The notes beneath the pieces are model-generated. The model saw only the letters and a list, made by a program, of their open reading frames with translations. It had not been told where the DNA came from and did no database searches. A program made the translations under genes and the position numbers. From IMG/VR virus record IMGVR_UViG_3300041402_000314, positions 124,001 to 188,000 of that record: a stretch of 64,000 nucleotides of DNA; one strand, 5' to 3'. Positions 8,197 through 38,388 of the stretch are shown here, in pieces (within the stretch, counting starts at the first letter, position 1; each line of letters begins with the position of its first letter).

Positions 8197-8781
8197 ATGA
8201 GTTTTAATTTTACTAACACTCCAGACAGAGCAGTGTATGAAAATACTTTAGCTGAAAGTATCGAAATTTTCGGAATTTCGATAGAATATCTCGTGGTTGA
8301 ATATGACGAAACCAAAGAAAAACTCTATGCTGAAGACAGCAAACCACATACAACCGCTAGATATTTGATGAAAGCACAGGCGGAGTATCTGGGTTCCGAG
8401 GATTTCATGCTAACAAAATTTGGGCTACAGAGCAGTGACCAAATGGAACTCGTCATATCAAAATCAAAATTCGAAGAAATCGTTGGCGATGGTGCGGAAC
8501 CCAAGAGCGGTGATCGTGTATATATTACTTATCAAGATAGATACTATACGGTCGCGGACGCGAAGGAAGAATCCAACATTTTTCTTCAACGGAAATTTTC
8601 GTGGATGCTTATTCTTAACCCTACTGACCTCATTGGAGCCGAAGTTACGCCTAATATTGGTGTACCTGATTATGAGGACGAAGAAGATATTTTTAATGAT
8701 AATGATCTTATCGATGAATTGGATGATGATATCGTAGTAGAGAAGACAGACGATGTTAATCCTTTCGGTGATTGGGAATAG
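8197..8781 (+). CDS. gp14: Neck/head-completion protein, T4 gp14-like
   Basis: E.IEIFG..IEY...LYAED...LTKFGL...D.MEL.I....F.....P..GD.VY motif pattern; position before gp15. Confidence 0.8.
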   Translation: MSFNFTNTPDRAVYENTLAESIEIFGISIEYLVVEYDETKEKLYAEDSKPHTTARYLMKAQAEYLGSEDFMLTKFGLQSSDQMELVISKSKFEEIVGDGAEPKSGDRVYITYQDRYYTVADAKEESNIFLQRKFSWMLILNPTDLIGAEVTPNIGVPDYEDEEDIFNDNDLIDELDDDIVVEKTDDVNPFGDWE

Positions 8782-9564: not shown

Positions 9565-10323
9565 ATGAGAACCTATTTTTTCCCAAATATTTTAAAAAAA
9601 ATACATATAGCTTTCCTTTCCCAATTTAAGGATTTGCAAGTAGCTAAATATGATAGTGCTGGTAATATACTTAATATGAGACAGGTTCCTATCACATTCG
9701 GACATAAAGGTAAGGAAATATCTATAGCTCAGAAGAAGGACAAAAGAAATTATTCAACTTTTTTGCCAAGAATTGCCGTGATGATGTCATCTATTAATCC
9801 TGCTCCTGAAAAGAGTAGAGGTGGTCATCTCGTAGAATTATGTAAATATACTACTGGTAGCGCAGATACCCTCCAGAAGTTATATGGTGGTTATCCATAT
9901 AAAATAGGCTATACTCTAACTATTCTTACCGAACATATGGGTGAGGCCAGTCAAATAATAGAACAGATATTACCTAGTTTTGTTCCATTTAAAAATGTGA
10001 CTATCAGGGAATTTGATTTTCTTCCTAGTTTCACTAGAGATATTCCTATATTATTAACTAGCGTAACTCCTACATTTCAAGATGAAACCACAGAAGATGA
10101 AATCAAGAGAATAGAATTCGATATTGAGTTTGATGTTGATTGTATGTTTTATAGACCTATACTCACTAGTGATATTATCAAAACCGTTAATGTTGATCTA
10201 ATTGATAGTTCTTTAGTTCCAGATATAACAGGAAATGATTTAGCTGGTTATGAATATGCTGTTAGTGGTGACGATATTGATGATTTTGATGTATTGACCG
10301 ATGAATGGACTGAATATATTTAA
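9565..10323 (+). CDS. gp15: Tail sheath stabilizer/terminator, T4 gp15-like
   Basis: YF...I...F...F.DLQV...VPITFG...LPRI...PY.I...L.I......QIIEQILPSF.P...RDIPI.L. Confidence 0.85.
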   Translation: MRTYFFPNILKKIHIAFLSQFKDLQVAKYDSAGNILNMRQVPITFGHKGKEISIAQKKDKRNYSTFLPRIAVMMSSINPAPEKSRGGHLVELCKYTTGSADTLQKLYGGYPYKIGYTLTILTEHMGEASQIIEQILPSFVPFKNVTIREFDFLPSFTRDIPILLTSVTPTFQDETTEDEIKRIEFDIEFDVDCMFYRPILTSDIIKTVNVDLIDSSLVPDITGNDLAGYEYAVSGDDIDDFDVLTDEWTEYI

Positions 10324-19510: not shown

Positions 19511-19897
19511 TTAATCCTCCATTAATTCAAGACATTGATTAAGTGTTATTAAGGCAAAAGGCATATCTAATTTATATTTAGCGCAATCTCTTACTACAAG
19601 ACCACGTTTAAGACAGCTCTTAGCTGGTGAACCTATTTTACAGTCATTATCTTTGCCTCCACCTTCACAGGTATATTCTATTAATCGGTATATACCATCT
19701 GCTCTAGTCTTACCCTCTCTTATCCACCACGTAGGTATAAAAACAAGTTCTGAAGGGATTACTTCACCTGATATAAGATGAGTTGTGATACCATCTGTCA
19801 ATTCGGCAAATTTAATACCAGTCAACTTACTTATCTTGATCATCTTCGTTAGTTTATCTTTCATCAGACTTCTCCTTTTCAATCGCCTGTTTGACAT
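19511..19897 (-). CDS. Hypothetical protein
   Basis: ORF track. Confidence 0.55.
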   Translation of the reverse strand: MSNRRLKRRSLMKDKLTKMIKISKLTGIKFAELTDGITTHLISGEVIPSELVFIPTWWIREGKTRADGIYRLIEYTCEGGGKDNDCKIGSPAKSCLKRGLVVRDCAKYKLDMPFALITLNQCLELMED

Positions 19898-20381
19898 CTT
19901 CTTCCATCCCTAATACACATTCTTTAACAAACCTCTTCTTTAAATATATTTCACCGCAAGGTTTCTTCATTGGTTGTACACCGACTATTTCATTTTTGTA
20001 TAACTGAGGAAATACCCTTCTAACAGGTAACTCTATTAACTGCCAATGATTGAATAGTTCTTTGAGTAATCTTATCGCCCTTTCTAAAGCCGATTCTTTA
20101 TTATGTTTTCCTTTTGGCGGATAAGGTATTTCTTCATATGTACCATCTGGCAACACATTCCAAACTTTATCACTATCAAAATTGGTTTCTGATGCATCTG
20201 GATTAAGATGTATATGATTATGACCTCTAGGGTTTATCCAGAATACATGTTCTTTCGGATTCCTTAAACAAACATATACAGAATTTCCATCCATTACTCT
20301 ACGCCAACTTTCTTGTCTTTCTATTAGACTTTGACAAATAGGGCAATGTCGCATACCTGTTATTCTGGAAGCTTCATTCAT
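19854..20381 (-). CDS. Zn-ribbon protein carrying a major-capsid (Gol-like) peptide
   Basis: N-terminal CPIC...C...H; internal LPVRRVFPQLYKNEIVGVQPMKKPCGEIY. Confidence 0.65.
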   Translation of the reverse strand: MNEASRITGMRHCPICQSLIERQESWRRVMDGNSVYVCLRNPKEHVFWINPRGHNHIHLNPDASETNFDSDKVWNVLPDGTYEEIPYPPKGKHNKESALERAIRLLKELFNHWQLIELPVRRVFPQLYKNEIVGVQPMKKPCGEIYLKKRFVKECVLGMEEDVKQAIEKEKSDER

Positions 20382-21862: not shown

Positions 21863-22207
21863 TTATGAAGTAATTCTACCAGCTTTCGAAGCGTCTTCAG
21901 CGTATATACTGAGAGGAAAGTTAAACGATGCGTACCTATCTCTTTCGACACCCAGACCAAATGGTGGGAATCTCATTGCTTCGAGTTCATCCCTAGAAAC
22001 GTATCCTAACTCAGGGAACCCTTGCCCAAGATCACAGAGACCGAAGAACATTCTGCTCTCCTCGTCATATTCCGTAATTAACCATGTACATGCTCCGCCA
22101 CCGAAAAACTTAACTACTGGTATGAAGTCAGACTCCCCACCAGACTCTTGATTGATCTTAGAGTTCCTAACCAGCTTATCTTCGATTATCTTAGTCATTA
22201 GTTTCAT
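21863..22207 (-). CDS. DUF2958-like protein
   Basis: PVVKFF.GGA.TWLITE.D.....FGLCDLG.G.PELGYVS..EL......G..VERD. Confidence 0.8.
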   Translation of the reverse strand: MKLMTKIIEDKLVRNSKINQESGGESDFIPVVKFFGGGACTWLITEYDEESRMFFGLCDLGQGFPELGYVSRDELEAMRFPPFGLGVERDRYASFNFPLSIYAEDASKAGRITS

Positions 22208-22346: not shown

Positions 22347-23108
22347 TTACTTCTTAAGAGCAGCTAAACGATCTTGAATACTCATAGTGGAAGTATCATC
22401 TCCACCACCCATAGCAGCCGTGATATTGGGGTCTTCATCGAGTCCACCAGTAGGCTTCAGAAGACGTGCTTTCATTGTTGATGCATCGGCAGACGCTTTG
22501 GCATCATCAGTACGTTTCTGCATGGCTTCGATAGCAGTATTGATACCACCTGTCTTGCTCCTAATACCACTGGCAAGCTCGGCACGTTTCGCCTTCTTCT
22601 TAGCACGTTCCTCTGCCAGTTGTGCTTTCTGCATACCCTGTTTTGCCTTCTTAAGTTCGGCACGAGCATCTTTGAGAGTATCAGCCGCTTCAGAAGCGGT
22701 AGCTTCGAGTTCATCCAACATTTCCTTGGCATCGATAGCTTCTTGCTTCTCACGCTCGACATCATCTCCCATTTCTTCGAGAAGACCAAGAAGGGTTCCG
22801 AGACTAGCGGATAGAGAGGCAACCTTTGTATCATCGTCTCCTGCTTCTGCTATCTGATTCTGAAGAGTCTCGGCAGCTTGTAACCTCTGATTATAGAGCT
22901 TGACGATTTCATCCGCTTCCCTCTGCTCCTTTCCATGCTCGACTCTCGCCTGACCAGCTTCTTTAAGAATCTGATTTAGGTTATCATCCATCATTTTGAT
23001 GGTGGCTTCAGTAGCTCCCTCGGTATCGTATCTAACGATAGCACCAGCAAGAGCCTCACCCGCATCTTCGATTTTTGTTTTTGTAAACGCTGATAGAAAT
23101 TTTAACAT
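22347..23108 (-). CDS. PspA/IM30-like coiled-coil protein (YjfJ-like)
   Basis: 253 aa all-helical Ala/Glu/Lys-rich; ends IQDRLAALKK; adjacent to a YjfK-like gene as in yjfJ-yjfK. Confidence 0.7.
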   Translation of the reverse strand: MLKFLSAFTKTKIEDAGEALAGAIVRYDTEGATEATIKMMDDNLNQILKEAGQARVEHGKEQREADEIVKLYNQRLQAAETLQNQIAEAGDDDTKVASLSASLGTLLGLLEEMGDDVEREKQEAIDAKEMLDELEATASEAADTLKDARAELKKAKQGMQKAQLAEERAKKKAKRAELASGIRSKTGGINTAIEAMQKRTDDAKASADASTMKARLLKPTGGLDEDPNITAAMGGGDDTSTMSIQDRLAALKK

Positions 23109-23127: not shown

Positions 23128-23808
23128 TTAGATTATTGATAGTGACATAGGATGAATTGTAAATCCTTTATATATGACTATATTAGCAAATACCTCACCC
23201 ATATCATCTTCCAGATCGAATTCGACTGCTACCAGTAGATATTCTGTTTCATCGCTGTTGAGAAACCTGTTGAATAGCATAGCATCACTATTATATTCGC
23301 CTTCTTCGGCTTCAGATTGTTCACCAGTTATTTCAATATCTTCCACAATACTGACTGGAGATGACCATTCACCGCTACCCCAAAGTCGTAAATAGGTTTC
23401 ATCGTCTGGAGTCTCAATATCGGAATAGCCTATTAGACCGTCATCCGTATCAAGCCAATCACTCCAATCTTCATCCGATTGAGGCTCAAACCCATAAGTC
23501 TGTTTGAAGAGAATAACTTCAGAACCATCCTTATTGAGTTGCATGAATACTTCATTATCGTTTTCCGTATTCTTCATGTAGACTCTATAAGTCTTATCTC
23601 CGAATATCTTGAGTCGGGAAATTGCGAGGACGGTGTATTTACCGCCCTCGAACCATTCCAATTCAGGATTTAAGAGAGATGGGGTATCATCCAAAGTTAT
23701 CAGGCTGTTTAATCTGATTCCTAGAGGAGCATCATCATGGACAATACCCTTTTTGGAATCCTTACGTTCCTTTAACTTATGTTTGAAGTAATCACCGACA
23801 AAACTCAT
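23128..23808 (-). CDS. DUF2491/YjfK-like protein
   Basis: PLGIRL...LD, W..WL....GLIG, Y.R.W, MLF.R....EYLLV..E pattern. Confidence 0.7.
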   Translation of the reverse strand: MSFVGDYFKHKLKERKDSKKGIVHDDAPLGIRLNSLITLDDTPSLLNPELEWFEGGKYTVLAISRLKIFGDKTYRVYMKNTENDNEVFMQLNKDGSEVILFKQTYGFEPQSDEDWSDWLDTDDGLIGYSDIETPDDETYLRLWGSGEWSSPVSIVEDIEITGEQSEAEEGEYNSDAMLFNRFLNSDETEYLLVAVEFDLEDDMGEVFANIVIYKGFTIHPMSLSII

Positions 23809-23810
23809 GA

Positions 23811-25415
23811 TTATCTCCCACTCGCCTGATTTCTGATAGAGGGTATAACACTATTTATCTCTTCCAGAAGGGCATCAAATACGGCTGGATTTTTATTCTT
23901 CCATTTGTTGGAAATGATCATATCCATATCAACGGTAATGGTATCGATATCACTGCTACCAAGCCATCCAGATTGGAGTTTACCGTAAGTACCTGCCTTG
24001 ATAGTACCGAACTTATAAATTGGCTTATTACCGGGGTCTTTCAGATTATCAAGACTACCATCTTCGATATTAGCCAATTTAAGTTCACCTCTACTACCAA
24101 GTTGTACGGCATTCCTCATGCTTCTGGCATTGATACCAGTAACAGCCAGTAAACAATCGGCTTGCCCATTAGTAACCTTAAGTACATTACCGCTCATACT
24201 CTTAGAGACCTTTACATTCACATCAGCATAATCGCTATTCTCGGCAACGAAATTTGCCCATGTCAGATAAGAACCAGAGTTTTCATAACCCACGAGAACC
24301 GTATTACCTGAGTCGAGGTCATCAATAGAATTGATATCGGCTTCAGTGTTACAAATAAGATGAGCATACTCGGTATATACAGACGGTATCCTTGAATAAT
24401 TTAGCTTAGAGTTGTTCTTCTGAGCATGAATCCAGTAACCGTCTCTTTGTACAAATGCAGCATCACAATGACCAGCATCTATTTTCTTGAGGTTATCCAT
24501 AGTACCTTCTGTACGAAGAACCTTTCCGTCTACGCTCATAGTAGCATTAGAAATCACGTTACCTGCATAGTAATACATACCGTCTGTTCCACCTGTACAA
24601 ATAGTTAGTGTAGGCTTAACGGCATTTGTTACGTCCTGAGATAGTGCAATATCAGCATCAACGCCTTCAGGAAGATAATTGGTATCGCGTGTACCGCTCA
24701 TCTGAGATACTTCACGATCAAGACGATCAAGCTTTGCTCTTAGCTCGGCATTCTCTCTTGCTTGCATATTAGCTTCCTGTCTCCAACCCTGATAACCAGC
24801 ATTGTTATATTGGTTATATGCAAAACTATTATTTGAATTATCTAGCATCATGTAAAGGAACATCGCATCCCACATACCGTAGCTCGAAGAACCGTAATAT
24901 ACATATGATGGCGCATTGTAGCCACTATAATATGAAGTCCTTCTGGTATCATAAGTTCTCGGATTATAATTAGAAGTCCTTTGGGCAATTTTATTATTAC
25001 TATATTTTCTCTTCAGCTTTGAAGTACGTACTGCTTTCTGCTTAGAGGTCTGAGTCTTCTTATTCGACTTCTTGAATTTAGAAGTATACGCAGCACTACG
25101 CTTCTTCGCTACAGTCTTCGGTGCTTTATTTTTAGCCCTTTGCTTACTAATCTTTGTCTTAGATGAGGTAGTCTTTGAGACTGCCTTCATTTTTCTCTTC
25201 GGCCTAGAAGTTGTTACGGTCTTAGACCTTGAAGAACTTCTCTTTCTTGCGTTTGAGAAAGAGCTTTTTGAACTACCCCAACTCTTTGAACTTGAGAAGC
25301 TTTTGGATGAAGAAAAACTCCTTCCGCCTCCACCCCTCCGAGCCTCTACTTCAACATAAGTCCATGTTGATATGAGAATCAATGCCAGTGCTATAATACT
25401 CAATTTGGTTTTCAT
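23811..25415 (-). CDS. Exported fusion: Ser/Lys/Arg-rich region plus TAXI-family TRAP solute-binding domain
   Basis: Signal peptide then ARRGGGGRS; C-terminal ICTGG..G.YY..G, TEGT.DN......DAAFVQ.D, Y.E..HL, SI.DL, G...SGS..T. Confidence 0.75.
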   Translation of the reverse strand: MKTKLSIIALALILISTWTYVEVEARRGGGGRSFSSSKSFSSSKSWGSSKSSFSNARKRSSSRSKTVTTSRPKRKMKAVSKTTSSKTKISKQRAKNKAPKTVAKKRSAAYTSKFKKSNKKTQTSKQKAVRTSKLKRKYSNNKIAQRTSNYNPRTYDTRRTSYYSGYNAPSYVYYGSSSYGMWDAMFLYMMLDNSNNSFAYNQYNNAGYQGWRQEANMQARENAELRAKLDRLDREVSQMSGTRDTNYLPEGVDADIALSQDVTNAVKPTLTICTGGTDGMYYYAGNVISNATMSVDGKVLRTEGTMDNLKKIDAGHCDAAFVQRDGYWIHAQKNNSKLNYSRIPSVYTEYAHLICNTEADINSIDDLDSGNTVLVGYENSGSYLTWANFVAENSDYADVNVKVSKSMSGNVLKVTNGQADCLLAVTGINARSMRNAVQLGSRGELKLANIEDGSLDNLKDPGNKPIYKFGTIKAGTYGKLQSGWLGSSDIDTITVDMDMIISNKWKNKNPAVFDALLEEINSVIPSIRNQASGR

Positions 25416-25442: not shown

Positions 25443-26477
25443 TTAGTTTAAATGTAGTTTTAAAATATTGCTCCACCTTGAACATGACGTATAATCAATT
25501 ACACTCCGATTCACCTCCTCCCTCAATTTACTATTCTGTTTAAATAATATTCCATAACTTTCTATATTGAAGTTAGCTTTATGTAAGGTAACACTATTGT
25601 TATCCTTTGTCAAGTGTTTTAATGTAGCATAGTCATAAAATACCACATCATGTAAACCTGCCTCCAGAGATTCGAGAGCATCTTCAGCGGAATCGAGACT
25701 TGAATATTGTACTCCCAGACTAGATAAAAGTTTACTACTGGCAGTATATGACGATGTAGCTATCTTCCCTTTATTACTTAACCACTTCACTGACTTATTG
25801 GTTTCGCTGATATTACTTAATGTAGCAGTAGCCGCCAGAGTAGCTATAAATGAACTGACTAAGATCAGTGCAATATACATCCAGACGGTAGTAGCAAGAC
25901 GGCCTTTTGCTGTTTTGGGAGCTTTATCACCTAGTCCGACAGTAGTAGCTACCACATGAGTAAACCAATATGTATTGAGCCAACCCTTAAAGCCTTTTCC
26001 AAAATCAGGATTATTACGCTCAAAATACCATATAACGGTAGCGATGAAACCGACAATAATTAAATAATTGATACAGGCGATTATAAAATCTACAGATATT
26101 AAGTTACTGATTACCATTAAGAATGTATTATCGGATTTTGTGGCTATTCCAGACGGTGAAGAAAAGTAAGGGTGTGAGAAATCATATTCCTTTTCTCTCT
26201 CGGATGTAATTGTGATAGCGGATAGACCGACATCGACCTCACCAGTTTTGATTTGAGAAAGTATATCTGTTAAAGAAAGTTCCTTTATATCGTAAGTATA
26301 ACCATTCCTAGAAGCAACTGCTTTCCAGAGGTCTATTGTGATTCCATACCAGATACCTCTCTCATCCTTCATAGAGAAAGGTGGCATCTCATCTGTAGCC
26401 ACTACCAAATGGGTTTGGGCATTAGCAGTAGATGTAATGCTTAGAATTAATAGTATGTAAATAAGTAGTCTTTTCAT
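25443..26477 (-). CDS. GluR0-like ligand-gated K+ channel (SBP S1 - TM1 - pore - TM2 - SBP S2)
   Basis: Signal peptide; PPFS, SAITITSERE, DFSHPY (SBP family 3); two TM helices around TTVGLGD; VFYD...ESYGI. Start set at MKRLL after RBS GGAG. Confidence 0.85.
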   Translation of the reverse strand: MKRLLIYILLILSITSTANAQTHLVVATDEMPPFSMKDERGIWYGITIDLWKAVASRNGYTYDIKELSLTDILSQIKTGEVDVGLSAITITSEREKEYDFSHPYFSSPSGIATKSDNTFLMVISNLISVDFIIACINYLIIVGFIATVIWYFERNNPDFGKGFKGWLNTYWFTHVVATTVGLGDKAPKTAKGRLATTVWMYIALILVSSFIATLAATATLSNISETNKSVKWLSNKGKIATSSYTASSKLLSSLGVQYSSLDSAEDALESLEAGLHDVVFYDYATLKHLTKDNNSVTLHKANFNIESYGILFKQNSKLREEVNRSVIDYTSCSRWSNILKLHLN

Positions 26478-26487
26478 GATTGTCTCC

Positions 26488-26516
26488 ATTATACCTAATT
26501 ATAATTTATTTGTCAA
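26488..26516 (-). promoter_or_regulatory. Consensus sigma70 promoter of the channel operon
   Basis: TTGACA-17-TATAAT on - strand. Confidence 0.75.
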
Positions 26517-26878
26517 GCTTTATTTTCAATTTCCCTTATGGAATGTTCCATACTTTTAATTCCATTATTGTTTTCTTTTCTTATCTCGAAGAAATTTTCC
26601 ATCGACAAATCTCTATACATTAAAAGTCTAGCATATATTGAGGTGAAGTCATTATTAATTTTGAATACATCACCTGTTGTTTTTAAGTCCTGATTAAATC
26701 TAATTACATATATAATAGCTTGGGCAGAATATTTCTTTCTACCTGCTTTCTTCATTTTATATGCTAGTTGTTTAAATTCCTTAAAGATATGTGGATTTTC
26801 TTGGTGGAATTCTTTAAACCGTTTTAAGGTCCTTTTTGAATAATGTCCAAATAACCCATTCCATTTTTCGTCTTTCAT
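26513..26878 (-). CDS. Phage hypothetical protein, paralog of 33332-33706
   Basis: F..FH.ENP.I...F...A......GRK.YS....IR.....FKINND....YARL...FF. Confidence 0.7.
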   Translation of the reverse strand: MKDEKWNGLFGHYSKRTLKRFKEFHQENPHIFKEFKQLAYKMKKAGRKKYSAQAIIYVIRFNQDLKTTGDVFKINNDFTSIYARLLMYRDLSMENFFEIRKENNNGIKSMEHSIREIENKA

Positions 26879-27242: not shown

Positions 27243-28868
27243 ATGGCTAAAAAAGATTATTATTTGGACGAAGAGGGAAACCCTGTTTTACCGTCCAATA
27301 CAACATTACTTCCCAAAATCGCGCGATACGATGGCAAGCCTAAAATCAAACGTGCTGGCATTAAAATGGAGCTTACTAGAGATCAGCTAGAAGAGATGGC
27401 TAAATGCTCTGCTGACGTAGAATACTTCATGTCAAGATATTGTTATATCGTTCACCCAGACAAGGGTAAACATAATATAGAGCTATATCCTTTTCAGTAT
27501 GACTTTGTTAATCACCTAAGAGATAATAGATTTTCTATTGTATTGGCTCCCAGACAATGCGGTAAATCTACAATTACTGCAATGTATGTACTCCACTATA
27601 TTCTTTTCAATGATGATAAGAAAGCTATTATCATGGCTAACAAGCTAAAGATAGCCAAAGAGATATTCCAGAAAGTTAGGATTGCCTATGAGTATCTACC
27701 GATTTTCCTTCAGGCTGGTGTCGTAGAATGGGCAAAGACTAGCTGTACCCTAGAGAATGGTTCTGGATGTTCTGCTGAAGCGACTAGCGCAGACGGTATG
27801 AGGGGTATATCTGGAAACCTTATTATCCTTGATGAGTTTGCTTTCCTCAAGAAGAATATAGCTGATGAATTCTTTACATCCATGTATCCGACTATATCAG
27901 CATCCAAAGAGGCGAAACTTATAATCATCTCTACTCCGAATGGTATGAACCACTATCATTCGATATGGAATAAAGCGGTTAAAAAGAAGAATACATTTGC
28001 GCCATTCAAGGTTAAATGGAATGATGTACCTGATCGTGATGAAGATTTCAAAGAAGAAACAATTAAGAATATTGGTAAGCTTAAATGGAATCAGGAATAT
28101 GAGTGTTCCTTTATAGGTAGTTCTAAAACATTAATTAAACCAGAAATTCTTGAGCAGTTAGAATCCGCAGACCCTATAGAGATTATAGATAACTGTTTTA
28201 AGATATACGAACAACCTATTGCTGGAAATACCTATGTTGTAGGTGCAGACTCCGCTAAAGGTACTGGTGGTGATTATTCTGTTTCTCAAGTCATAGATAT
28301 TACAGCCTTTCCATTTAGACAAGTTGCCGTCTATAGGAATAATGAGATAAGCACAAATAAGTATGGTGATAAAGTATATGAAATAGCTATGAAGTATAAT
28401 GAAGCTTTTGTCATGTGCGAGAATAACGATGTCGGTCAAGCAGTAGTGAATAAATTATGGCATGACTTAGAATACGAGAATCTAGTCAACTATGCTGCTA
28501 CTAAAGCTGGTAGAAAAGATATAGGTATTAGAGCTACCAAGAAAACTAAATCTATGGGATGTGATCTACTTCAGGAATTCTTTGAGGATTTCTTAATAGA
28601 GATATTTGACTTAGATACCATATATGAAATATCTAAATTCGAGGAAACATCTACTGGTATATTCAAGGCAGAAGATGGAGAACATGACGATACTGTTATG
28701 GCTCTTCTCTGGGCATTGTTTATTATAAAGACTAATTATATTGACCGAGAAGATGATATCAGGGCTTCTAGGGATAGTGATGAAGACCAATATGATGATG
28801 AACCACTAGCACCCATCATAATCGATGGGGCTGGTGAAGAAGACGGTAATTTTTTATTCCATAACTAA
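27243..28868 (+). CDS. terL: Terminase large subunit, T4 gp17-like
   Basis: Walker A APRQCGKST, Walker B LIILDEFAF, STPNG.NH, QEYEC.F, nuclease GAD...G.G.DYS and HDD.VMA. Confidence 0.95.
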   Translation: MAKKDYYLDEEGNPVLPSNTTLLPKIARYDGKPKIKRAGIKMELTRDQLEEMAKCSADVEYFMSRYCYIVHPDKGKHNIELYPFQYDFVNHLRDNRFSIVLAPRQCGKSTITAMYVLHYILFNDDKKAIIMANKLKIAKEIFQKVRIAYEYLPIFLQAGVVEWAKTSCTLENGSGCSAEATSADGMRGISGNLIILDEFAFLKKNIADEFFTSMYPTISASKEAKLIIISTPNGMNHYHSIWNKAVKKKNTFAPFKVKWNDVPDRDEDFKEETIKNIGKLKWNQEYECSFIGSSKTLIKPEILEQLESADPIEIIDNCFKIYEQPIAGNTYVVGADSAKGTGGDYSVSQVIDITAFPFRQVAVYRNNEISTNKYGDKVYEIAMKYNEAFVMCENNDVGQAVVNKLWHDLEYENLVNYAATKAGRKDIGIRATKKTKSMGCDLLQEFFEDFLIEIFDLDTIYEISKFEETSTGIFKAEDGEHDDTVMALLWALFIIKTNYIDREDDIRASRDSDEDQYDDEPLAPIIIDGAGEEDGNFLFHN

Positions 28869-29792: not shown

Positions 29793-30175
29793 TATGAATC
29801 GCGATAACCAGTATCACAATAATAATCATTAGATTGAACTTTGGAGAATATCTGACTGATTTTAATATCATTCGAACCAAGGATATTGATAAACCAATTA
29901 CCTTCTTTCGTTTCAGGTAGAGCAGACTCAATCTTTTTCCAAAGTAGATACTTATTCACATGTATATTATACTCATCGTCACGATAAGCGTCATAGAGAG
30001 CAAGTATATTCTTAACCGAGGCATCGGGTACAGTTAGAACCGTTCGGTTCTTCTCCTGCAATCTACGGGCTTCTATTTCCTGTTCCCTCTTTTCTATTCT
30101 AGCCTGTATTTCTGCTTTTTGTTTTGCTTTCTCTTTTCTCTTCTTCTGTACATATTTAAAGATCATCGGTTCCAT
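29759..30175 (-). CDS. Hypothetical protein
   Basis: ORF track. Confidence 0.55.
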   Translation of the reverse strand: MEPMIFKYVQKKRKEKAKQKAEIQARIEKREQEIEARRLQEKNRTVLTVPDASVKNILALYDAYRDDEYNIHVNKYLLWKKIESALPETKEGNWFINILGSNDIKISQIFSKVQSNDYYCDTGYRDSYWDATRKKLVS

Positions 30176-30819
30176 TCCTCCACTTGTCTTAAAATTTCAA
30201 TAGCAATTCCTTCTTTTTCCATACAGGTTGTTGCGCCTTCATTAGTTACGATATGAGCGACATGACAATTTTCTCTAATCATTTCCTCTTTATCATTGGT
30301 AACAACCATATCACAGCCATTTTTATCTATAGATTCATACCCAAGATTAACTAGCTCTCTATAAGACGCTCCTACCTCAAACTTAAACCCAACAAGGTAA
30401 GCTTCTGGATTCCATTTCTTTATATAGGAAATCACCTTTGGAGTCTTTCTGATATTATCTCTCATATAATCTATGAAAGCATCAGCATCATTAGACTTCA
30501 CCTTAACAGGATTCTCTCTATTGAATGTGAAATCGGATACAGCCATAGCATGGATAATAACATCAGCTTTGGGAACATATCTTTCCATTTTCTCCATAAG
30601 GTCTTTAGTGTCTTTAACATCAATAAACCATAGTCTTTCATCGTTATAATACGGGTTTGGTAATATGGAATTTCTACCATGTATAAAAAATACATCATGT
30701 CCGTCTTTCAAAAATGTTTCAGCTATAATAGCACCTAATTTCCCTGTACTGATATTAGTAAGGACTCGGACATCATCGATATATTCAGTTGTCCCACCAG
30801 ATGTAATTAATATTTTCAT
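30163..30819 (-). CDS. coaB: Phosphopantothenate-cysteine ligase (CoaB-like)
   Basis: ITSGGT.EYID.VR..TN.STG.LG, IHAMAVSDF, LVGFKFE, CD..V.ND. Confidence 0.85.
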   Translation of the reverse strand: MKILITSGGTTEYIDDVRVLTNISTGKLGAIIAETFLKDGHDVFFIHGRNSILPNPYYNDERLWFIDVKDTKDLMEKMERYVPKADVIIHAMAVSDFTFNRENPVKVKSNDADAFIDYMRDNIRKTPKVISYIKKWNPEAYLVGFKFEVGASYRELVNLGYESIDKNGCDMVVTNDKEEMIRENCHVAHIVTNEGATTCMEKEGIAIEILRQVEEWNR

Positions 30820-34447: not shown

Positions 34448-34476
34448 ATTATATCATTAAAAGAATTCTTTGTCAA
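34448..34476 (-). promoter_or_regulatory. Sigma70-type early promoter
   Basis: TTGACA-17-TATAAT on - strand. Confidence 0.65.
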
Positions 34477-35571: not shown

Positions 35572-35623
35572 ATTATAACAGAATGGAACTCTTCTGTCAA
35601 GAAAAATCCTGAAAGTATAAATA
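35572..35623. promoter_or_regulatory. Back-to-back early (-) and late (+) promoters
   Basis: TTGACA-17-TATAAT on - (35572-35600); TATAAATA on + (35616-35623). Confidence 0.75.
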
Positions 35624-35663: not shown

Positions 35664-37304
35664 ATGCCACAATTACTTTCACCCGATGTAAACATAGTCG
35701 AAAGAGATTTAAGTGCTTTTGTTGCGTCTGTAGCTACCAGTATAGCAGTATATGTAGGTAGGGCTACTAAAGGACCAGTATGGGAAAAGACACAGGTTTC
35801 CAATGAAAGACAGTTTGCAGAACTATTCGGTGAGCCGACATCAACTGATTATGAGGATTTTTTTACCGCTGCTGGATTCCTTCAGTATGGTAACACCTTG
35901 TATTACACAAGAGTCGTTGATACCGCAACTGCTAAAAACTCACAATTAAACGTAAGCACTGGTGCTGCTCCTTCTGCTGGAGATGGTGATTATGTTGCTG
36001 ATTGGGAAGAATATACGCCCTCATTCGGTGCTGAGAAAATGCAAGTGTACGCTAAGTATCCGGGAGCTTACGGTGACACTGATTTCAAAGTAGCAATGAT
36101 CAGTAATACAGATTGGGCTACTATAGGTACATCACCTACTCTCTCTGGTTATGAGTCTGTCATCGATCAAGGTCCAGAGCTTGCTACAGAATTCCTTGTT
36201 ATCGTATCTGCTCTACAGTCAGATGGAGAATATGAAATCCTCGAAACTTACCTTGTTTCTGATACCGAAGGAACTAAGGACTTCGAAGGCAATAACATGT
36301 ATGTCGATGAGGTCATTAATAAAGGCTCAAACTACATACTAGTATTCAATAATACTGGCGTGTCCGCTGAACTACAGTCGTTTGCTGAGACTGCTCCTGC
36401 TAATGGTGCGGACGGTGATATAAATGAAGCCGATATCGTACTAGGATATGATCTTTATGATAACCCTGAAGAAATCGAAATCAACTATGTGATAGGTGGT
36501 AGTCATACTACTGTTGCAACTGCAAATGCTATTCTTGCGCTATGTGTTGCAAGAGCAGACTGTTTTGCGATTCTCGATGTTCCTAAATCTGATGTTGTAG
36601 GTATTGCTAGTATTTCAACCGCTGTAAGTAATGTAGTAGACTATAGAAAGACGGAACTTAATGCTAATACTTCTTACGGTGCGCTATATGCTAACTGGCT
36701 TTATATCTATGATAAATATAACGATACAAACAGATGGGTTCCGAGTGGTGGTCATGTAGCTGGTATCTATGCCCATACTGCTAATGTAGAGGATGCATGG
36801 TTCGCTCCTGCTGGACTTAATAGAGGTATTTTGAGTAACGTTATTAAGCTGGCTATGAATCCGGGTAAATCTTATAGAGATACGCTATATAAGAATCAAA
36901 TCAATCCATTGGTTAGTTTCCCCGGTCAAGGAATTAGTGTTTGGGGTCAAAAGACTCTCCAGACTAAACCTTCTGCATTCGATAGAGTTAATGTTAGATT
37001 ACTCTTTCTATACATGGAAAAAGCTATTGGTAGAAGTGCAAAATATGTTGTTTTCGAACAAAATGATCAGCTTACTAGAAGTATCTTTAAGAACCAGATT
37101 GAACCATTCCTTGATGATATCAAAGGCAGAAGAGGTATATATGACTTCTTAGTATTGGTAGATGAATCCGTTAATACGCCCGAAAGAGTGGACAGAAATG
37201 AGTTTCATTGTGAAATTTTCGTAAAACCAGTTAAGAGTGCAGAATTTATCGTACTTCGTTTCACTGCGACAAAAACTGGTGTAGACTTTAGTGAGTTAAC
37301 TTAA
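35664..37304 (+). CDS. gp18: Tail sheath protein, T4 gp18-like
   Basis: SPDVNIVERDLS, GP, WFAPAGLNRG, RD.LY...INP, WGQKT, FDR.NVR.LF, FE.ND..TR, IFVKP.KS.EFI.L.F. Confidence 0.95.
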   Translation: MPQLLSPDVNIVERDLSAFVASVATSIAVYVGRATKGPVWEKTQVSNERQFAELFGEPTSTDYEDFFTAAGFLQYGNTLYYTRVVDTATAKNSQLNVSTGAAPSAGDGDYVADWEEYTPSFGAEKMQVYAKYPGAYGDTDFKVAMISNTDWATIGTSPTLSGYESVIDQGPELATEFLVIVSALQSDGEYEILETYLVSDTEGTKDFEGNNMYVDEVINKGSNYILVFNNTGVSAELQSFAETAPANGADGDINEADIVLGYDLYDNPEEIEINYVIGGSHTTVATANAILALCVARADCFAILDVPKSDVVGIASISTAVSNVVDYRKTELNANTSYGALYANWLYIYDKYNDTNRWVPSGGHVAGIYAHTANVEDAWFAPAGLNRGILSNVIKLAMNPGKSYRDTLYKNQINPLVSFPGQGISVWGQKTLQTKPSAFDRVNVRLLFLYMEKAIGRSAKYVVFEQNDQLTRSIFKNQIEPFLDDIKGRRGIYDFLVLVDESVNTPERVDRNEFHCEIFVKPVKSAEFIVLRFTATKTGVDFSELT

Positions 37305-37319
37305 GATATAAATATTTAA

Positions 37320-37377
37320 GGAAGGACAGTGGGTAGCTCCCATTGATGATGTGTTTACTCCATATCATCTTACTTCC
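37320..37377 (+). ncRNA. Putative three-way-junction structured RNA, copy 2 (5' leader of nuclease gene)
   Basis: P1 GGAAG/CTTCC, GA, P2 CAGTGGG/CCCATTG with GCTCC, P3 ATGATGTG/CATATCAT, CTTA; starts 6 nt after TATAAATA 37307-37314. Confidence 0.55.
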
Positions 37378-37407
37378 ATACATAACTTAAATAATGGAGT
37401 AAACATT

Positions 37408-38388
37408 ATGAAAGAAAAAATAATTTGTCATATTTGCTATAAAGAATTTAATTCTATTCTTAGTTTATCGAGACACATCAAACCCGCTCACAGTATATCA
37501 AGTAAAGATTATTTTGATAAATTTATCAAAAAAGAGAAAAGTGGTTTATGCTCAGTATGTTCAAATCCTACTCGTTTTGTTAATTTCGGTATAGGATACA
37601 AAAAATATTGTTCAAATAGCTGTCATAACAGAGATAAGAAAGCTCTGACAGATATAAGAGATGCACTTATCTATGAAGAAAAAATAAAAACCGAAACGAT
37701 AGTTTTTGACTGTGAGATTTGCGGATATAAAATTTTTAATAACTATCATGGTATTGGTTCTCATCTAAAACATAAACATAACTTATCTATACAAGAATAT
37801 TATGATAAATATTATTTAGAAAATATATTAGATAAGAAATGTAACATTTGTGACCGAGAAACATCATTTCGCTCTTTAGAAGTTGGGTATACTAAATATT
37901 GCTCTATTTCTTGTAGTAACAAGGAAGAGGTTAACATATTAGCAAGAAAGAAAGGTATAAATAAGAAAGAAGTAAAGGAGAGACAGTCTCGTAATTTATC
38001 ACAGAGAATTTTAAATGGGACTTTTAATCCATTCGCTAAAAAATTTAAAACTGGATATTTTTATTCTGAGAAAAATCAGAAAGATTTGTATTACCGTTCA
38101 TCATATGAATTAAAAGCATATCAAATGTTGGAACAGATGTCTTTAGTTAACATATATGAAACTGAACCATTTAGAATACCTTATAAGGATATGAAAGGTG
38201 TAACTAGAAATTATATACCTGATATTTTGATTATCTATGAAGATGGTATGAGAGAATTGGTAGAAGTGAAACCAGAAAATTTATTAAAGGATGAAACCAT
38301 TCAAATAAAAACAGAATCTGCCAAACAGTATTGTAAAGCCAATAACATGTCCTTTAATATATGGACTGAAAAATTCCTAGAACTATAA
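37408..38388 (+). CDS. Free-standing putative homing endonuclease: repeated Zn fingers plus TnsA-like PD-(D/E)xK domain
   Basis: CxxC...HxxxxH and CxxC...YC repeats; YRSSYE...EPF.IPY....Y.PD.......LVEVKP; start revised to ATG 37408 after GGAG. Confidence 0.75.
   Translation: MKEKIICHICYKEFNSILSLSRHIKPAHSISSKDYFDKFIKKEKSGLCSVCSNPTRFVNFGIGYKKYCSNSCHNRDKKALTDIRDALIYEEKIKTETIVFDCEICGYKIFNNYHGIGSHLKHKHNLSIQEYYDKYYLENILDKKCNICDRETSFRSLEVGYTKYCSISCSNKEEVNILARKKGINKKEVKERQSRNLSQRILNGTFNPFAKKFKTGYFYSEKNQKDLYYRSSYELKAYQMLEQMSLVNIYETEPFRIPYKDMKGVTRNYIPDILIIYEDGMRELVEVKPENLLKDETIQIKTESAKQYCKANNMSFNIWTEKFLEL

What the first reader, a model, noticed from the sequence alone, without database searches (positions are those of the whole stretch)
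25443..26477. Phage-encoded GluR0-like ionotropic receptor with a TTVGLGD filter
Seen: signal peptide, S1 lobe (PPFS, SAITITSER with the carboxylate-binding Arg), TM1, pore helix, TTVGLGD, TM2, S2 lobe, all intact. Established: this is the topology of cyanobacterial GluR0; most prokaryotic K+ filters read TVGYGD, while GLG occurs in some two-pore-domain K+ channels. Viral K+ channels (Kcv-type) are minimal and lack ligand-binding lobes. Inference: a ligand-gated ion channel controlled by a phage.
Basis: partly seen in the sequence, partly recalled or inferred. Interest (0 to 1): 0.85.

Follow-up and report, generated by a model that had tools for sequence, protein, structure and literature searches.

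The report
Phage-encoded amino-acid-gated potassium channel cassette
A large T4-like phage carries an intact bacterial-type glutamate-receptor potassium channel (GluR0 type), and in at least seven phage lineages this gene leads the same four-gene membrane cassette, which suggests that phages control their host's potassium flux in response to amino acids outside the cell.

Summary
Window 25443-26477 (minus strand) is an intact 344-aa gene. It has a signal peptide, S1 lobe, M1, pore helix with TTVGLGD, M2 and S2 lobe, and no third transmembrane helix.

Pfam, PDB sequence matches and a confident AlphaFold model (pLDDT 94, best fold hits AMPA-receptor LBD-TMD) place it in the GluR0-type prokaryotic glutamate-receptor family.

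It is a phage gene. The window belongs to a 204-kb IMG/VR contig, and structural genes flank the locus on both sides. The gene has a conserved consensus sigma-70-type promoter and dN/dS of 0.12-0.18.

The channel is the first gene of a four-gene cassette found in at least seven large-phage lineages:
- the channel;
- a secreted protein with a TAXI binding domain;
- a YjfK-like DUF2491 protein;
- a coiled-coil protein with a possible PspA/Vipp1 fold.

The last three genes derive from a bacterial module related to yjfJKL. The cassette-linked channels can be fitted as one phage-specific clade.

GLG is rare (3 of 154 family filters read). It comes with matched pore-helix changes (W176F, T180V), and functional viral Kcv channels are reported to use GLG.

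Conductance, ligand and physiological role are untested. The best guess is amino-acid-gated K+ flux working with a membrane-maintenance module early in infection.

The parts
25443..26477 (-). GluR0-type channel gene, 344 aa from the MKRL start. The mechanical ORF extends to 26489.
   Evidence: ORF. Pfam SBP_bac_3 split by Lig_chan/Ion_trans_2. AF2 pLDDT 94.2. Foldseek best hits are AMPA receptor LBD-TMD at E 1e-21. Start site argued.
26488..26516 (-). Consensus sigma-70-type promoter (TTGACA-17-TATAAT, 12/12) directly upstream of the channel gene. GGAG follows at 26484-26487.
   Evidence: The same -35/-10 and GGAG are kept upstream of the gene in L008 and L001, although dS to L001 is about 0.96.
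26418..26477 (-). Signal peptide (MKRL...TANA, Ala-x-Ala type end)
   Evidence: Read from the sequence; no dedicated predictor was available.
26115..26417 (-). S1 lobe of the ligand-binding domain. It holds PPF (36-38), T95 and the carboxylate-binding Arg98 in SAITITSER.
   Evidence: R98 is 99% conserved in 130 bacterial relatives.
26019..26093 (-). M1 transmembrane helix (model helix 133-157)
25926..25994 (-). Pore helix (166-182) and selectivity filter TTVGLGD (182-188, window 25926-25946)
   Evidence: Filter census. Lineage-specific W176F, T180V and Y186L.
25809..25910 (-). M2 transmembrane helix (model helix 194-227). It contains SSFIATLAAT, which resembles the SYTANLAAF gate motif of iGluRs (comparison from memory).
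   Evidence: The motif comparison was not tested.
25446..25802 (-). S2 lobe, with T249/S251, Asp286 (alpha-amino-binding position) and E310-x-Y312-G313
23811..25415 (-). Cassette gene 2, 534 aa. It has a signal peptide, about 135 aa of Ser/Lys/Arg-rich low complexity, a conserved WDAMF-motif segment with a short coiled coil, and a C-terminal TAXI/NMT1_3 solute-binding domain.
   Evidence: Pfam NMT1_3 3.6e-18. TIGR02122 75 bits, below its 84-bit cut-off. phrog_6856 6e-41. Composition. Domain mapping against bacterial relatives.
23128..23808 (-). Cassette gene 3, 226 aa, DUF2491 (YjfK-like). No hydrophobic segment, so presumably cytoplasmic.
   Evidence: Pfam DUF2491 1.7e-16. 27% identity to E. 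coli YjfK, E 9e-10. Hydropathy.
22347..23108 (-). Cassette gene 4, 253 aa, an all-helical coiled-coil protein with a possible PspA/Vipp1 (ESCRT-III-like) fold
   Evidence: Helix pattern. The five best Foldseek hits are Vipp1, but weak (E 4e-3 to 1.4e-2). No Pfam or hhalign support. Bacterial homologues sit next to DUF2491, DUF350 or a sigma-54 activator.

Best explanation
The gene encodes a functional GluR0-type channel.

How the protein is built (read from the sequence and the family, not measured):
- A cleaved signal peptide puts the two-lobed amino-acid-binding domain in the host periplasm.
- M1, the re-entrant pore loop and M2 form an inverted K+-channel pore in the inner membrane.
- Binding of an alpha-amino acid by Arg98, Thr95 and Asp286 closes the clamshell and opens a K+-selective TTVGLGD pore in a tetramer.

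How it is expressed: the phage transcribes it from a consensus sigma-70-type promoter, which suggests early expression by host RNA polymerase (inferred). It is the first gene of a four-gene cassette. The partners are a secreted TAXI-domain protein, a cytoplasmic YjfK-like DUF2491 protein and a coiled-coil protein with a possible PspA/Vipp1 fold.

Inferred role: the last three genes are a captured bacterial inner-membrane maintenance module. The channel adds a ligand-conditional route by which K+ can re-enter, driven by the membrane potential. This would keep K+ content, turgor and membrane potential of the infected cell in a range that supports phage replication.

Shown here: architecture, family membership, phage residence, cassette conservation and purifying selection. 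Inferred: K+ selectivity, the ligand class, tetramer formation, expression timing and the physiological role.
For: Architecture and fold.

Binding and pore residues: R98, D286 and the G-x-G-D core are kept, and positions conserved in 130 bacterial relatives are mostly kept.

Filter: the Tyr-to-Leu change comes with W176F and T180V. In KcsA these positions correspond to Trp68 and Thr72, the hydrogen-bond partners of the filter Tyr (KcsA correspondence from memory). This looks like a coordinated repacking, not decay. GLG occurs in functional Kcv channels (PMC12332018).

Selection: dN/dS is 0.12-0.18 for the channel and 0.08-0.17 for its partners.

Phage residence: TerL, tail sheath and baseplate genes lie to the right, and virion protein, head-closure and sheath-stabiliser genes to the left. 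The window is part of a 204-kb IMG/VR contig.

Cassette: the same gene order occurs in the window, L001, L002, L007/L095, L009, L179 and L184, each with different phage neighbours.

Single origin not rejected: a tree holding all eight cassette-linked channels together has a higher likelihood than the free tree, p-AU 0.585.

Promoter: conserved at -35, -10 and GGAG across relatives.

Bacterial origin of the core: DUF2491 with DUF350 and the coiled-coil gene in Zavarzinia, and a sigma-54 activator with DUF2491 and the coiled-coil gene in Fundidesulfovibrio.

Precedents: yjfJ-type pspA operons that contain DUF2491 also encode a K+ channel (PMC11237479). Synechocystis GluR0 sits in the plasma membrane with both termini outside, lets a K+-uptake-deficient E. 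coli grow at low K+, and buffers cell volume after KCl upshock (PMC13099474).
Against: Nothing functional was measured. Conductance, selectivity of a homotetrameric GLG pore in this scaffold, ligand identity and tetramer formation are all unverified.

The PspA assignment of gene 4 failed every sequence test: Pfam and hhalign against YjfJ (probability 9% and 0.5%). It rests on weak fold hits and gene neighbourhood.

The TAXI protein has no explained role.

Three loci carry the three-gene core without a channel (L011, L185, L190), so the core does not need the channel.

The host is unknown, so periplasmic placement assumes a diderm host.

The conserved GGAG lies so close to the -10 box that a transcript from this promoter would have only a few bases of leader. 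The two signals may therefore not act together.
Confidence: 0.6

Rival explanations
1. The channel acts as an environmental sensor for infection timing or exclusion. Amino acids released by lysing neighbours open the channel. The resulting change in membrane potential or K+ delays lysis, or blocks DNA entry by superinfecting phages. This would be functionally analogous to periplasmic sensing in T4 lysis inhibition.
For: The ligand-binding domain faces outward. The cassette has a second secreted binding domain, the TAXI domain. The promoter suggests early expression. The GluR0 paper itself suggests that effluxed glutamate may activate GluR0 (PMC13099474).
Against: A K+-selective pore clamps the potential near E_K and does not collapse it, so it is a poor exclusion or lysis effector. 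No holin, antiholin or exclusion gene is linked. There is no direct evidence.
Confidence: 0.15
2. The cassette is a counter-defence. A membrane-repair module with a PspA-like protein, plus a K+ re-entry channel, offsets abortive-infection effectors that perforate or depolarise the inner membrane.
For: The best fold matches of gene 4 are the membrane-remodelling proteins Vipp1 and PspA. The core derives from a bacterial module that sits beside DUF350 or a sigma-54 activator, as psp-type operons do. The cassette occurs in large phages inside variable regions of small ORFs.
Against: No PADLOC match and no known anti-defence family match. The PspA homology is unproven. The idea is speculative.
Confidence: 0.1
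3. The protein is a non-conducting or non-selective receptor. The Tyr-to-Leu change, with loss of the Trp/Thr hydrogen-bond partners, has abolished K+ selectivity or conduction. The protein then signals by conformation, as delta-type iGluRs do, or passes cations non-selectively.
For: GLG is found only in this small group, 3 of 154 family filters read. Three pore-helix positions that are 85-94% conserved in bacteria are changed.
Against: T-T-V-G-x-G-D is otherwise intact. Relatives in the same cassette keep GYG or GFG. GLG filters work in Kcv channels (PMC12332018). The whole pore is under purifying selection.
Confidence: 0.1
4. The gene is host-derived contamination or a chimeric assembly, and the channel is really a bacterial gene.
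For: GC is somewhat higher at 22-26 kb (0.39-0.415 against about 0.34). Close bacterial families exist at about 35% identity.
Against: Phage structural genes lie on both sides within one contig. The cassette recurs in at least seven independent assemblies, always among phage genes. The nearest bacterial relatives reach only 34-38% identity and stand alone. The window clade is monophyletic on a long stem. GC3 is close to that of TerL.
Confidence: 0.02

Closest known systems
GluR0 of Synechocystis PCC 6803 (slr1257) and the 'Group 1' prokaryotic glutamate-receptor channels (Chen et al. 1999; PMC2950845)
   Same: Signal peptide, S1, M1, P-loop with a K+ signature, M2, S2, and no third TM. Conserved Arg and Asp for the alpha-carboxyl and alpha-amino groups. 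Sequence matches to the GluR0 and Nostoc homologue ligand-binding cores.
   Different: Encoded by a phage. Only about 25-35% identical to bacterial members. The filter is GLG instead of GYG, with W176F and T180V. It heads a fixed four-gene cassette, whereas the bacterial relatives examined stand alone.
Kcv-type and phage miniature K+ channels (chloroviruses; Vibrio, Mycobacterium and Acinetobacter phages; PMC6163359, PMC12332018)
   Same: A virus-encoded pore with the TxVG(Y/F/L)GD signature. GLG and GFG variants occur there too.
   Different: Those are 82-259 aa pore modules without an extracellular ligand-binding domain. In BFVD they match only the pore part of the model, with TMq about 0.2. 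The orientation of the pore in the membrane is opposite.
Glutamate-receptor-like proteins of giant viruses (PBCV-1 411-aa protein; Cafeteria roenbergensis virus E3T502)
   Same: A viral gene with an iGluR-like LBD plus pore. E3T502 matches the whole model (TMq 0.78, E 1e-23). Glycine-dependent single-channel activity was reported for the PBCV-1 protein (PMC6163359).
   Different: These are viruses of eukaryotes. The PBCV-1 proteins have three predicted TMs. E3T502 is only 22% identical. None is a bacteriophage, and none is reported in a comparable cassette.
GluATCV, the synthetic fusion of a GluA1 ligand-binding domain to the KcvATCV-1 pore (PMC6385376; reviewed in PMC12332018)
   Same: A glutamate-receptor LBD gating a viral K+ pore. 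It works without M4 and needs a signal peptide for the inverted orientation.
   Different: It is an engineered chimera. The window holds a naturally evolved equivalent in a phage.
E. coli yjfIJKLMC and related yjfJ-type pspA operons (PMC11237479)
   Same: They contain DUF2491 (YjfK) and a coiled-coil/PspA-type gene, and in some bacteria also DUF350 and a K+ channel. Bacterial relatives of the phage core show DUF2491, DUF350 and the coiled-coil gene together.
   Different: The K+ channel there has intracellular ligand sensing, not a periplasmic GluR0 LBD. The phage cassette has no CesT/Tir, DUF1190 or polyamine genes and adds a TAXI domain. Homology of gene 4 to YjfJ could not be shown.

Membership tests
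GluR0-type prokaryotic ionotropic glutamate receptor (K+-filter group) | Periplasmic-binding-protein fold (SBP_bac_3) split into S1 and S2 by a 2-TM pore module | tested here: met
   Pfam SBP_bac_3 spans 28-337, with Lig_chan and Ion_trans_2 at 143-254. S1 and S2 align separately to solved binding proteins.
GluR0-type prokaryotic ionotropic glutamate receptor (K+-filter group) | N-terminal signal peptide that places the LBD outside the cell | tested here: met
   Hydrophobic N-terminus ending in A-N-A. Read from the sequence; no dedicated predictor was run.
GluR0-type prokaryotic ionotropic glutamate receptor (K+-filter group) | Two TM helices plus a re-entrant pore loop, and no third TM after S2 | tested here: met
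   Only M1 and M2 are hydrophobic beyond the signal peptide. Model helices are 133-157, 166-182 and 194-227, followed by a soluble S2.
GluR0-type prokaryotic ionotropic glutamate receptor (K+-filter group) | K+ channel signature TxVG(Y/F/L)GD | tested here: met
   TTVGLGD. This is the Leu variant. Among 154 filters read in family members, 142 are GYG, 8 GFG and 3 GLG.
GluR0-type prokaryotic ionotropic glutamate receptor (K+-filter group) | Alpha-amino-acid-binding residues: Arg in S1 and an acidic residue in S2 | tested here: met
   R98 and D286 are near-invariant columns. They align to the equivalent positions of AncQR, ArtJ and the Nostoc GluR0-homologue LBD.
GluR0-type prokaryotic ionotropic glutamate receptor (K+-filter group) | Overall fold of an iGluR LBD-TMD subunit | tested here: met
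   AF2 pLDDT 94.2, pTM 0.82. Foldseek top 50 are all AMPA-receptor chains, E about 1e-21.
GluR0-type prokaryotic ionotropic glutamate receptor (K+-filter group) | Tetrameric assembly, K+-selective conductance and gating by amino acids | not testable with these tools
   No multimer prediction or experiment was available.
Kcv-type minimal viral K+ channel | Pore module only (about 80-130 aa), with no sensor domain | tested here: not met
   The protein is 344 aa with a full LBD. Viral K+ channels match only the pore, with TMq about 0.2.
PspA/IM30/Vipp1 (ESCRT-III-like), for cassette gene 4 | Sequence match to PF04012 or to a family member | tested here: not met
   No PF04012 hit in 16 members, even at E up to 1. 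hhalign against E. coli YjfJ gives probability 9% with a single sequence and 0.5% with a profile. The PDB profile search gives only generic coiled coils.
PspA/IM30/Vipp1 (ESCRT-III-like), for cassette gene 4 | Fold: N-terminal amphipathic helix, long helical hairpin and further helices | tested here: inconclusive
   Model helices are 2-24, 29-88, 93-183, 190-216 and 244-252. The five best Foldseek hits are Vipp1, and PspA entries follow, but E is only 4e-3 to 0.35 and TM-scores are 0.25-0.45.
PspA/IM30/Vipp1 (ESCRT-III-like), for cassette gene 4 | Psp-type gene neighbourhood | tested here: met
   Bacterial homologues lie next to DUF2491 and DUF350 or next to a sigma-54 activator and DUF2491. 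This parallels yjfJKL and operons described in PMC11237479.
DUF2491 / YjfK, for cassette gene 3 | Match to PF10679 above the gathering score, and similarity to E. coli YjfK | tested here: met
   60.5 bits against a cut-off of 25. BLASTP to YjfK gives 27% identity, E 9e-10.
TAXI-type TRAP transporter solute receptor, for cassette gene 2 | TAXI/NMT1_3 binding domain | tested here: met
   PF16868 scores 66.6 bits against a cut-off of 27. TIGR02122 scores 75.2 bits, below its 84.35 cut-off.
TAXI-type TRAP transporter solute receptor, for cassette gene 2 | Adjacent fused TRAP membrane component | tested here: not met
   No such gene occurs in any of the cassette loci. The domain is instead fused to a long N-terminal module shared with bacterial DUF2491 proteins.
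Known anti-phage defence systems (PADLOC) | Match of any cassette protein to a defence-system model | tested here: not met
   No hits except generic coiled-coil noise for gene 4.

The most novel reading that the evidence does not exclude
The four genes form a phage-borne 'sense and maintain' organ for the host envelope. Two periplasmic binding domains (the GluR0 LBD and the TAXI domain) read extracellular metabolites, such as glutamate released by lysing neighbours. The K+ channel converts that reading into a change of membrane potential and turgor. The DUF2491 and PspA-like pair remodels or repairs the inner membrane. Together they would let the phage tune lysis timing, exclude competitors or survive membrane-targeting abortive-infection defences. 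This would amount to ligand-gated electrical signalling used by a virus of bacteria.
Probability: 0.12. Interest if true: 0.9.

Novelty: new variant of a known kind. Interest (0 to 1): 0.7.

Why it matters
GluR0-type channels are the accepted prokaryotic ancestors of neurotransmitter receptors, yet their physiological role was first shown directly only in 2026 (K+ and cell-volume control in Synechocystis; PMC13099474).

A phage-specific clade of these channels, kept under purifying selection and locked to three membrane-associated partners, offers two things:
1. The first candidate ligand-gated channel of a bacteriophage that I could find. A 2018 survey of viral transport proteins lists only small K+ pores in phages (PMC6163359), and my searches of GenBank phages and BFVD found no phage equivalent.
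2. A genetic context that points to a role. It links K+ flux to a YjfK and possibly PspA-like membrane module, an association also noted in bacteria (PMC11237479).

It is also a natural counterpart of the engineered 'viral K+ pore plus glutamate-binding domain' channel. It provides a natural experiment on the GYG-to-GLG filter change, because the compensating pore-helix substitutions are visible. Small, compact (344 aa) ligand-gated K+ channels are attractive for structural work and as biosensor parts.

Tried and rejected
- GenBank phages: tblastn with the channel found only partial S1 hits and no full-length relative. Megablast of 12 kb around the gene found nothing.
- PADLOC: no defence-system match for any cassette protein.
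- PspA homology of gene 4: Pfam on 16 members, PDB profile searches and two hhalign runs against E. coli YjfJ all failed.
- The last large protein search, with YjfJ as query, listed only near-identical enterobacterial sequences among its best 120. It did not give the diverse profile I wanted.
- Vibrio phage 2.275.O is a cultured phage that carries a K+ channel and also has a TAXI-like hit. The TAXI-like gene there stands alone, with no cassette.
- Upstream ORF 26513-26878 (phrog_13625) and downstream DUF2958 are not conserved next to the cassette in other loci, so they are not part of it.
- Donor and host inference is unresolved. One tree puts the window clade beside Bacteroidota. The second finds Melioribacteraceae nearest by path. 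The coiled-coil gene's named relatives are Proteobacteria and Desulfobacterota, and the promoters are sigma-70-like. No tRNA genes were found.
The metagenome scan with A2 returned nine loci: high-GC loci with the fused bacterial form and one lower-GC three-gene core without a channel (L190).
- Specific ligand prediction was not attempted beyond 'alpha-amino acid'.
Full report
**1. The observation**

The minus-strand ORF 25443..26489 encodes 348 aa.
- The first ATG is created by the last two bases of a TATAAT box plus a G.
- A GGAG lies 6 nt upstream of the second ATG.
- The 79%-identical homologue in L001 lacks the first ATG and begins MKRL.

- Signal peptide MKRL...TANA: window 26418-26477.
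- PPFS: residues 36-39.
- SAITITSER: window 26196-26222.
- TTVGLGD: window 25926-25946.

Hydropathy shows only three hydrophobic segments: the signal peptide, M1 and M2. Residue numbers below count from the first ATG; subtract 4 for the MKRL start.

**2. What the protein is**

Pfam finds SBP_bac_3 (1.9e-26) spanning residues 28-337. It is interrupted by Lig_chan (1.1e-10) and Ion_trans_2 (6.8e-10) at 143-254, and Lig_chan-Glu_bd matches 27-118.

Sequence search of the PDB gives amino-acid-binding proteins first: an ancestral Gln/Arg binder, GlnPQ, ArtJ and GlnH. It also finds the ligand-binding cores of a Nostoc GluR0 homologue (2pyy) and of Synechocystis GluR0 (1ii5/1iit), and the LBD-TMD part of AMPA, kainate, delta and NMDA receptors.

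An AlphaFold2 model built on 135 homologues has mean pLDDT 94.2 and pTM 0.82. Its helices lie at 133-157 (M1), 166-182 (pore helix) and 194-227 (M2). All 50 best Foldseek matches in the PDB are AMPA-receptor chains, mostly LBD-TMD structures, at E about 1e-21.

The Arg that binds the ligand carboxylate (R98) and the Asp at the alpha-amino-binding position (D286) are near-invariant in the family and are kept here. So are T95, Y312 and the G-x-G-D core of the filter. There is no third transmembrane helix.

Every sequence-level feature that defines a GluR0-type receptor is therefore met. Tetramerisation, conductance and gating cannot be tested with these tools.

**3. The filter**

I could read a filter motif in 154 family members found by the two protein searches. 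Of these, 142 have GYG, 8 have GFG, and only the window and its two closest relatives have GLG.

The change is not isolated.
- The whole window clade has W176F.
- The three GLG proteins also have T180V.

By alignment to the KcsA signature, and from my memory of that structure, these positions are Trp68 and Thr72, the hydrogen-bond partners of the filter Tyr hydroxyl. The more distant members of the window's own clade read TTVGFGD (P0003) and SITQGYGD (P0019), and the second subclade (L009, L179, L184) reads TTGYGD.

This looks like an ordered, compensated repacking of the cuff behind the filter, not decay. A recent review states that GYG, GFG and GLG all occur among functional Kcv channels (PMC12332018). 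A homotetrameric GLG filter is therefore compatible with a working K+ channel.

**4. It is a phage gene**

The window is part of IMGVR_UViG_3300041402_000314, a 204-kb contig.
- To the right of the gene lie a T4-type large terminase (27243-28868), a tail sheath (35664-37304), a tail protein and a baseplate wedge subunit.
- To the left lie a virion structural protein (5417-6643), a head-closure protein (8197-8781) and a tail-sheath stabiliser (9565-10323).

TerL is only about 40% identical to its best GenBank matches, which are cyanomyoviruses and a Desulfovibrio phage. This is a distant T4-like lineage.

The channel gene shows dN/dS of 0.18 against a 91%-identical copy and 0.12 against a 79%-identical copy. 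Its GC3 (0.31) equals that of TerL. The closest cellular relatives are 34-38% identical and stand alone among ordinary bacterial genes. Misassembly or host contamination is excluded for practical purposes.

**5. Promoter**

A perfect TTGACA-17-TATAAT lies at 26516-26488 on the minus strand. It overlaps the stop codon of the upstream ORF. The -35 box, the -10 box and the GGAG are kept in L008 and L001, although synonymous sites between the window and L001 are close to saturation (dS about 0.96).

Two more perfect matches lie on the same strand, at 34476 and 35600. The second sits at the head of the long minus-strand block that runs from about 35.6 kb to 12.4 kb. About 1.5 matches with up to one mismatch are expected by chance in the whole window.

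I infer that the cassette is transcribed by host RNA polymerase, probably early. The host probably uses sigma-70-type -35/-10 promoters.

**6.

Three genes follow the channel, at gaps of 27, 2 and 19 bp on the same strand.
- **Gene 2 (23811-25415, 534 aa).** It has a signal peptide, about 135 residues of Ser/Lys/Arg-rich low complexity, a conserved segment with a WDAMF motif and a short coiled coil, and a C-terminal TAXI/NMT1_3 solute-binding domain.
- **Gene 3 (23128-23808, 226 aa).** It is a DUF2491 protein, 27% identical to E. coli YjfK.
- **Gene 4 (22347-23108, 253 aa).** It is an all-helical protein.

The same four genes occur in the same order in these loci:

| Locus | Channel identity to the window | Context |
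|---|---|---|
| L001 | 79% | 5.8-kb contig, HNH gene downstream |
| L002 | 61% | 9-kb contig of small unannotated ORFs |
| L007/L095 | 44% | between RtcB and DnaB; PolB and a RecA-like gene nearby |
| L009/L010 | 29% | 298-kb contig, next to T4-type RNA ligase 1 |
| L179/L180 | not computed (44% to L184) | 165-kb contig with DenV and NAD-dependent ligase |
| L184 | not computed (44% to L179) | 75-kb IMG/VR contig |

The genes flanking the cassette differ in every case, so the unit is exactly these four genes. All four are under purifying selection where it is measurable (dN/dS 0.08-0.17).

**7. Origin of the cassette**

Three low-GC loci carry genes 2-4 without a channel: L011/L012, L185 and L190.

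High-GC bacterial loci carry a fused protein. Its order is signal peptide, low-complexity region, WDAMF segment, TM helix and DUF2491. It is followed by DUF350 in L013 (Zavarzinia) and by the coiled-coil gene. In Fundidesulfovibrio a sigma-54 activator precedes DUF2491, a 338-aa protein with the N-terminal module, and the coiled-coil gene.

This mirrors E. coli yjfJ (PspA family), yjfK (DUF2491) and yjfL (DUF350). It also mirrors the yjfJ-type pspA operons described by Ravi and co-workers, one class of which also encodes a K+ channel with an intracellular sensor (PMC11237479).

The TM-then-DUF2491 order in bacteria implies a topology: the N-terminal module is periplasmic and DUF2491 is cytoplasmic. 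In the phage version the TAXI domain takes the place of the TM helix and DUF2491, so it should be periplasmic, like the channel's LBD.

**8. Is gene 4 a PspA?**

For:
- The model's helix pattern fits: 2-24, 29-88, 93-183, 190-216 and 244-252.
- The five best Foldseek hits are Vipp1, and several PspA and Vipp1 entries follow.
- Two database sources call homologues PspA.
- The gene neighbourhood fits.

Against:
- There is no PF04012 match in 16 members.
- hhalign against YjfJ gives 9% and 0.5% probability.
- The fold E-values are weak (4e-3 and worse) and TM-scores are low.

I record this as inconclusive.

**9. Phylogeny**

In a tree of 103 family members, the window, P0001/L008, L001, L002 and L007 form a clade with 100% SH-aLRT support on a long stem. 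After adding L179 and L184, these two form a second fully supported clade with L009.

A tree that forces all eight cassette-linked channels together has a log-likelihood 8 units higher than the free search found, with p-AU 0.585. One acquisition followed by long divergence inside phages, down to 29% identity, is therefore the simplest reading. It is not proven.

The bacterial donor is unresolved. Bacteroidota are sister in one tree, and Melioribacteraceae are nearest by path in the other.

Eight further large IMG/VR contigs (L014-L021, 40-548 kb) carry GluR0-like genes of a different branch and lack the cassette. I did not verify that they are phages, beyond RtcB and HNH hits.

**10. Mechanism**

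Shown:
- a GluR0-type subunit with intact binding and pore residues;
- phage residence;
- a conserved promoter;
- fixed linkage to three partners.

Established for the family: Synechocystis GluR0 is a K+ channel in the plasma membrane with both termini outside. It lets a K+-uptake-deficient E. coli grow at low K+ and slows cell shrinkage after KCl upshock (PMC13099474).

Inferred: in an infected diderm host, the phage channel opens when an amino acid occupies the periplasmic LBD. K+ then moves down its electrochemical gradient, which means inward when the membrane potential is more negative than E_K. This would restore K+ and turgor. It would work alongside a membrane-maintenance module made of DUF2491 and the PspA-like protein.

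The survey of viral transport proteins notes that T4 and T5 raise host K+ conductance at DNA injection (PMC6163359). That gives a plausible need for such a function.

The rivals are a lysis-timing or exclusion sensor, counter-defence against membrane-targeting abortive infection, and a non-conducting receptor. They are listed with their tests. None is excluded by sequence.

**11. Novelty**

Already known:
- the GluR0 family, with more than 500 clusters at E below 1e-30 in the representative library;
- small K+ channels in phages, and glutamate-receptor-like proteins in chloroviruses (PMC6163359);
- a CroV protein with the full architecture.

I found no phage protein with this architecture in GenBank phages or in BFVD, and no paper describing one. 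Those literature searches cover open-access text only.

New here:
- a phage-specific clade of ligand-gated K+ channels;
- its fixed four-gene cassette;
- the compensated GLG filter.

I rate it a new variant of a known kind, with interest 0.7. Function remains to be measured.

Noticed in passing
window 34448-34476 and 35572-35600 (minus strand), together with 26488-26516: Three perfect 12/12 sigma-70 consensus promoters (TTGACA-17-TATAAT) lie on the minus strand, inside or at the head of the minus-strand block of small ORFs (about 12.4-35.6 kb). This is probably an early-gene region read by host RNA polymerase.
   Followed up: partly
window 37351-38388 (+): A 345-aa ORF has a C-terminal part that matches a head-closure protein (phrog_218). 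Its N-terminal and middle parts match endonuclease and homing-endonuclease families. It may be a fusion or a mobile-endonuclease insertion next to a neck gene.
   Followed up: no
window 30163-30819 (-): A phage ORF has a strong DFP match (PF04127, the DNA/pantothenate metabolism flavoprotein C-terminal domain, E 9e-37). It is a possible auxiliary metabolic gene.
   Followed up: no
window 21863-22207 (-): A DUF2958 protein (E 5e-30) lies directly downstream of the cassette, after a 139-bp gap. It is not conserved next to the cassette in other phages.
   Followed up: partly
L014-L021 (IMG/VR contigs of 40-548 kb): A second, separate group of GluR0-like genes (26-31% identity to the window, GYG filters) occurs in large IMG/VR contigs, without the DUF2491 and coiled-coil genes. 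They cluster on the cyanobacterial GluR0 side of the tree. Their viral nature was not verified.
   Followed up: partly
L017:12556-14949 and L018:8609-11002: A 797-aa RtcB-like ligase matches the RtcB family in two separate stretches. This suggests an intein or another insertion.
   Followed up: no
L011/L012, L185, L190: The three-gene core (TAXI-domain protein, DUF2491, coiled-coil) occurs without any channel gene, in low-GC contigs of mostly unannotated small ORFs. One of them is binned as a Desulfobulbaceae MAG but looks phage-like.
   Followed up: partly
window 19854-20381 (-): In a 175-aa ORF, only residues 120-146 match the N-terminus of the T4 major capsid protein Gp23 (Pfam E 4e-6, phrog_138). 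The meaning is unclear.
   Followed up: no
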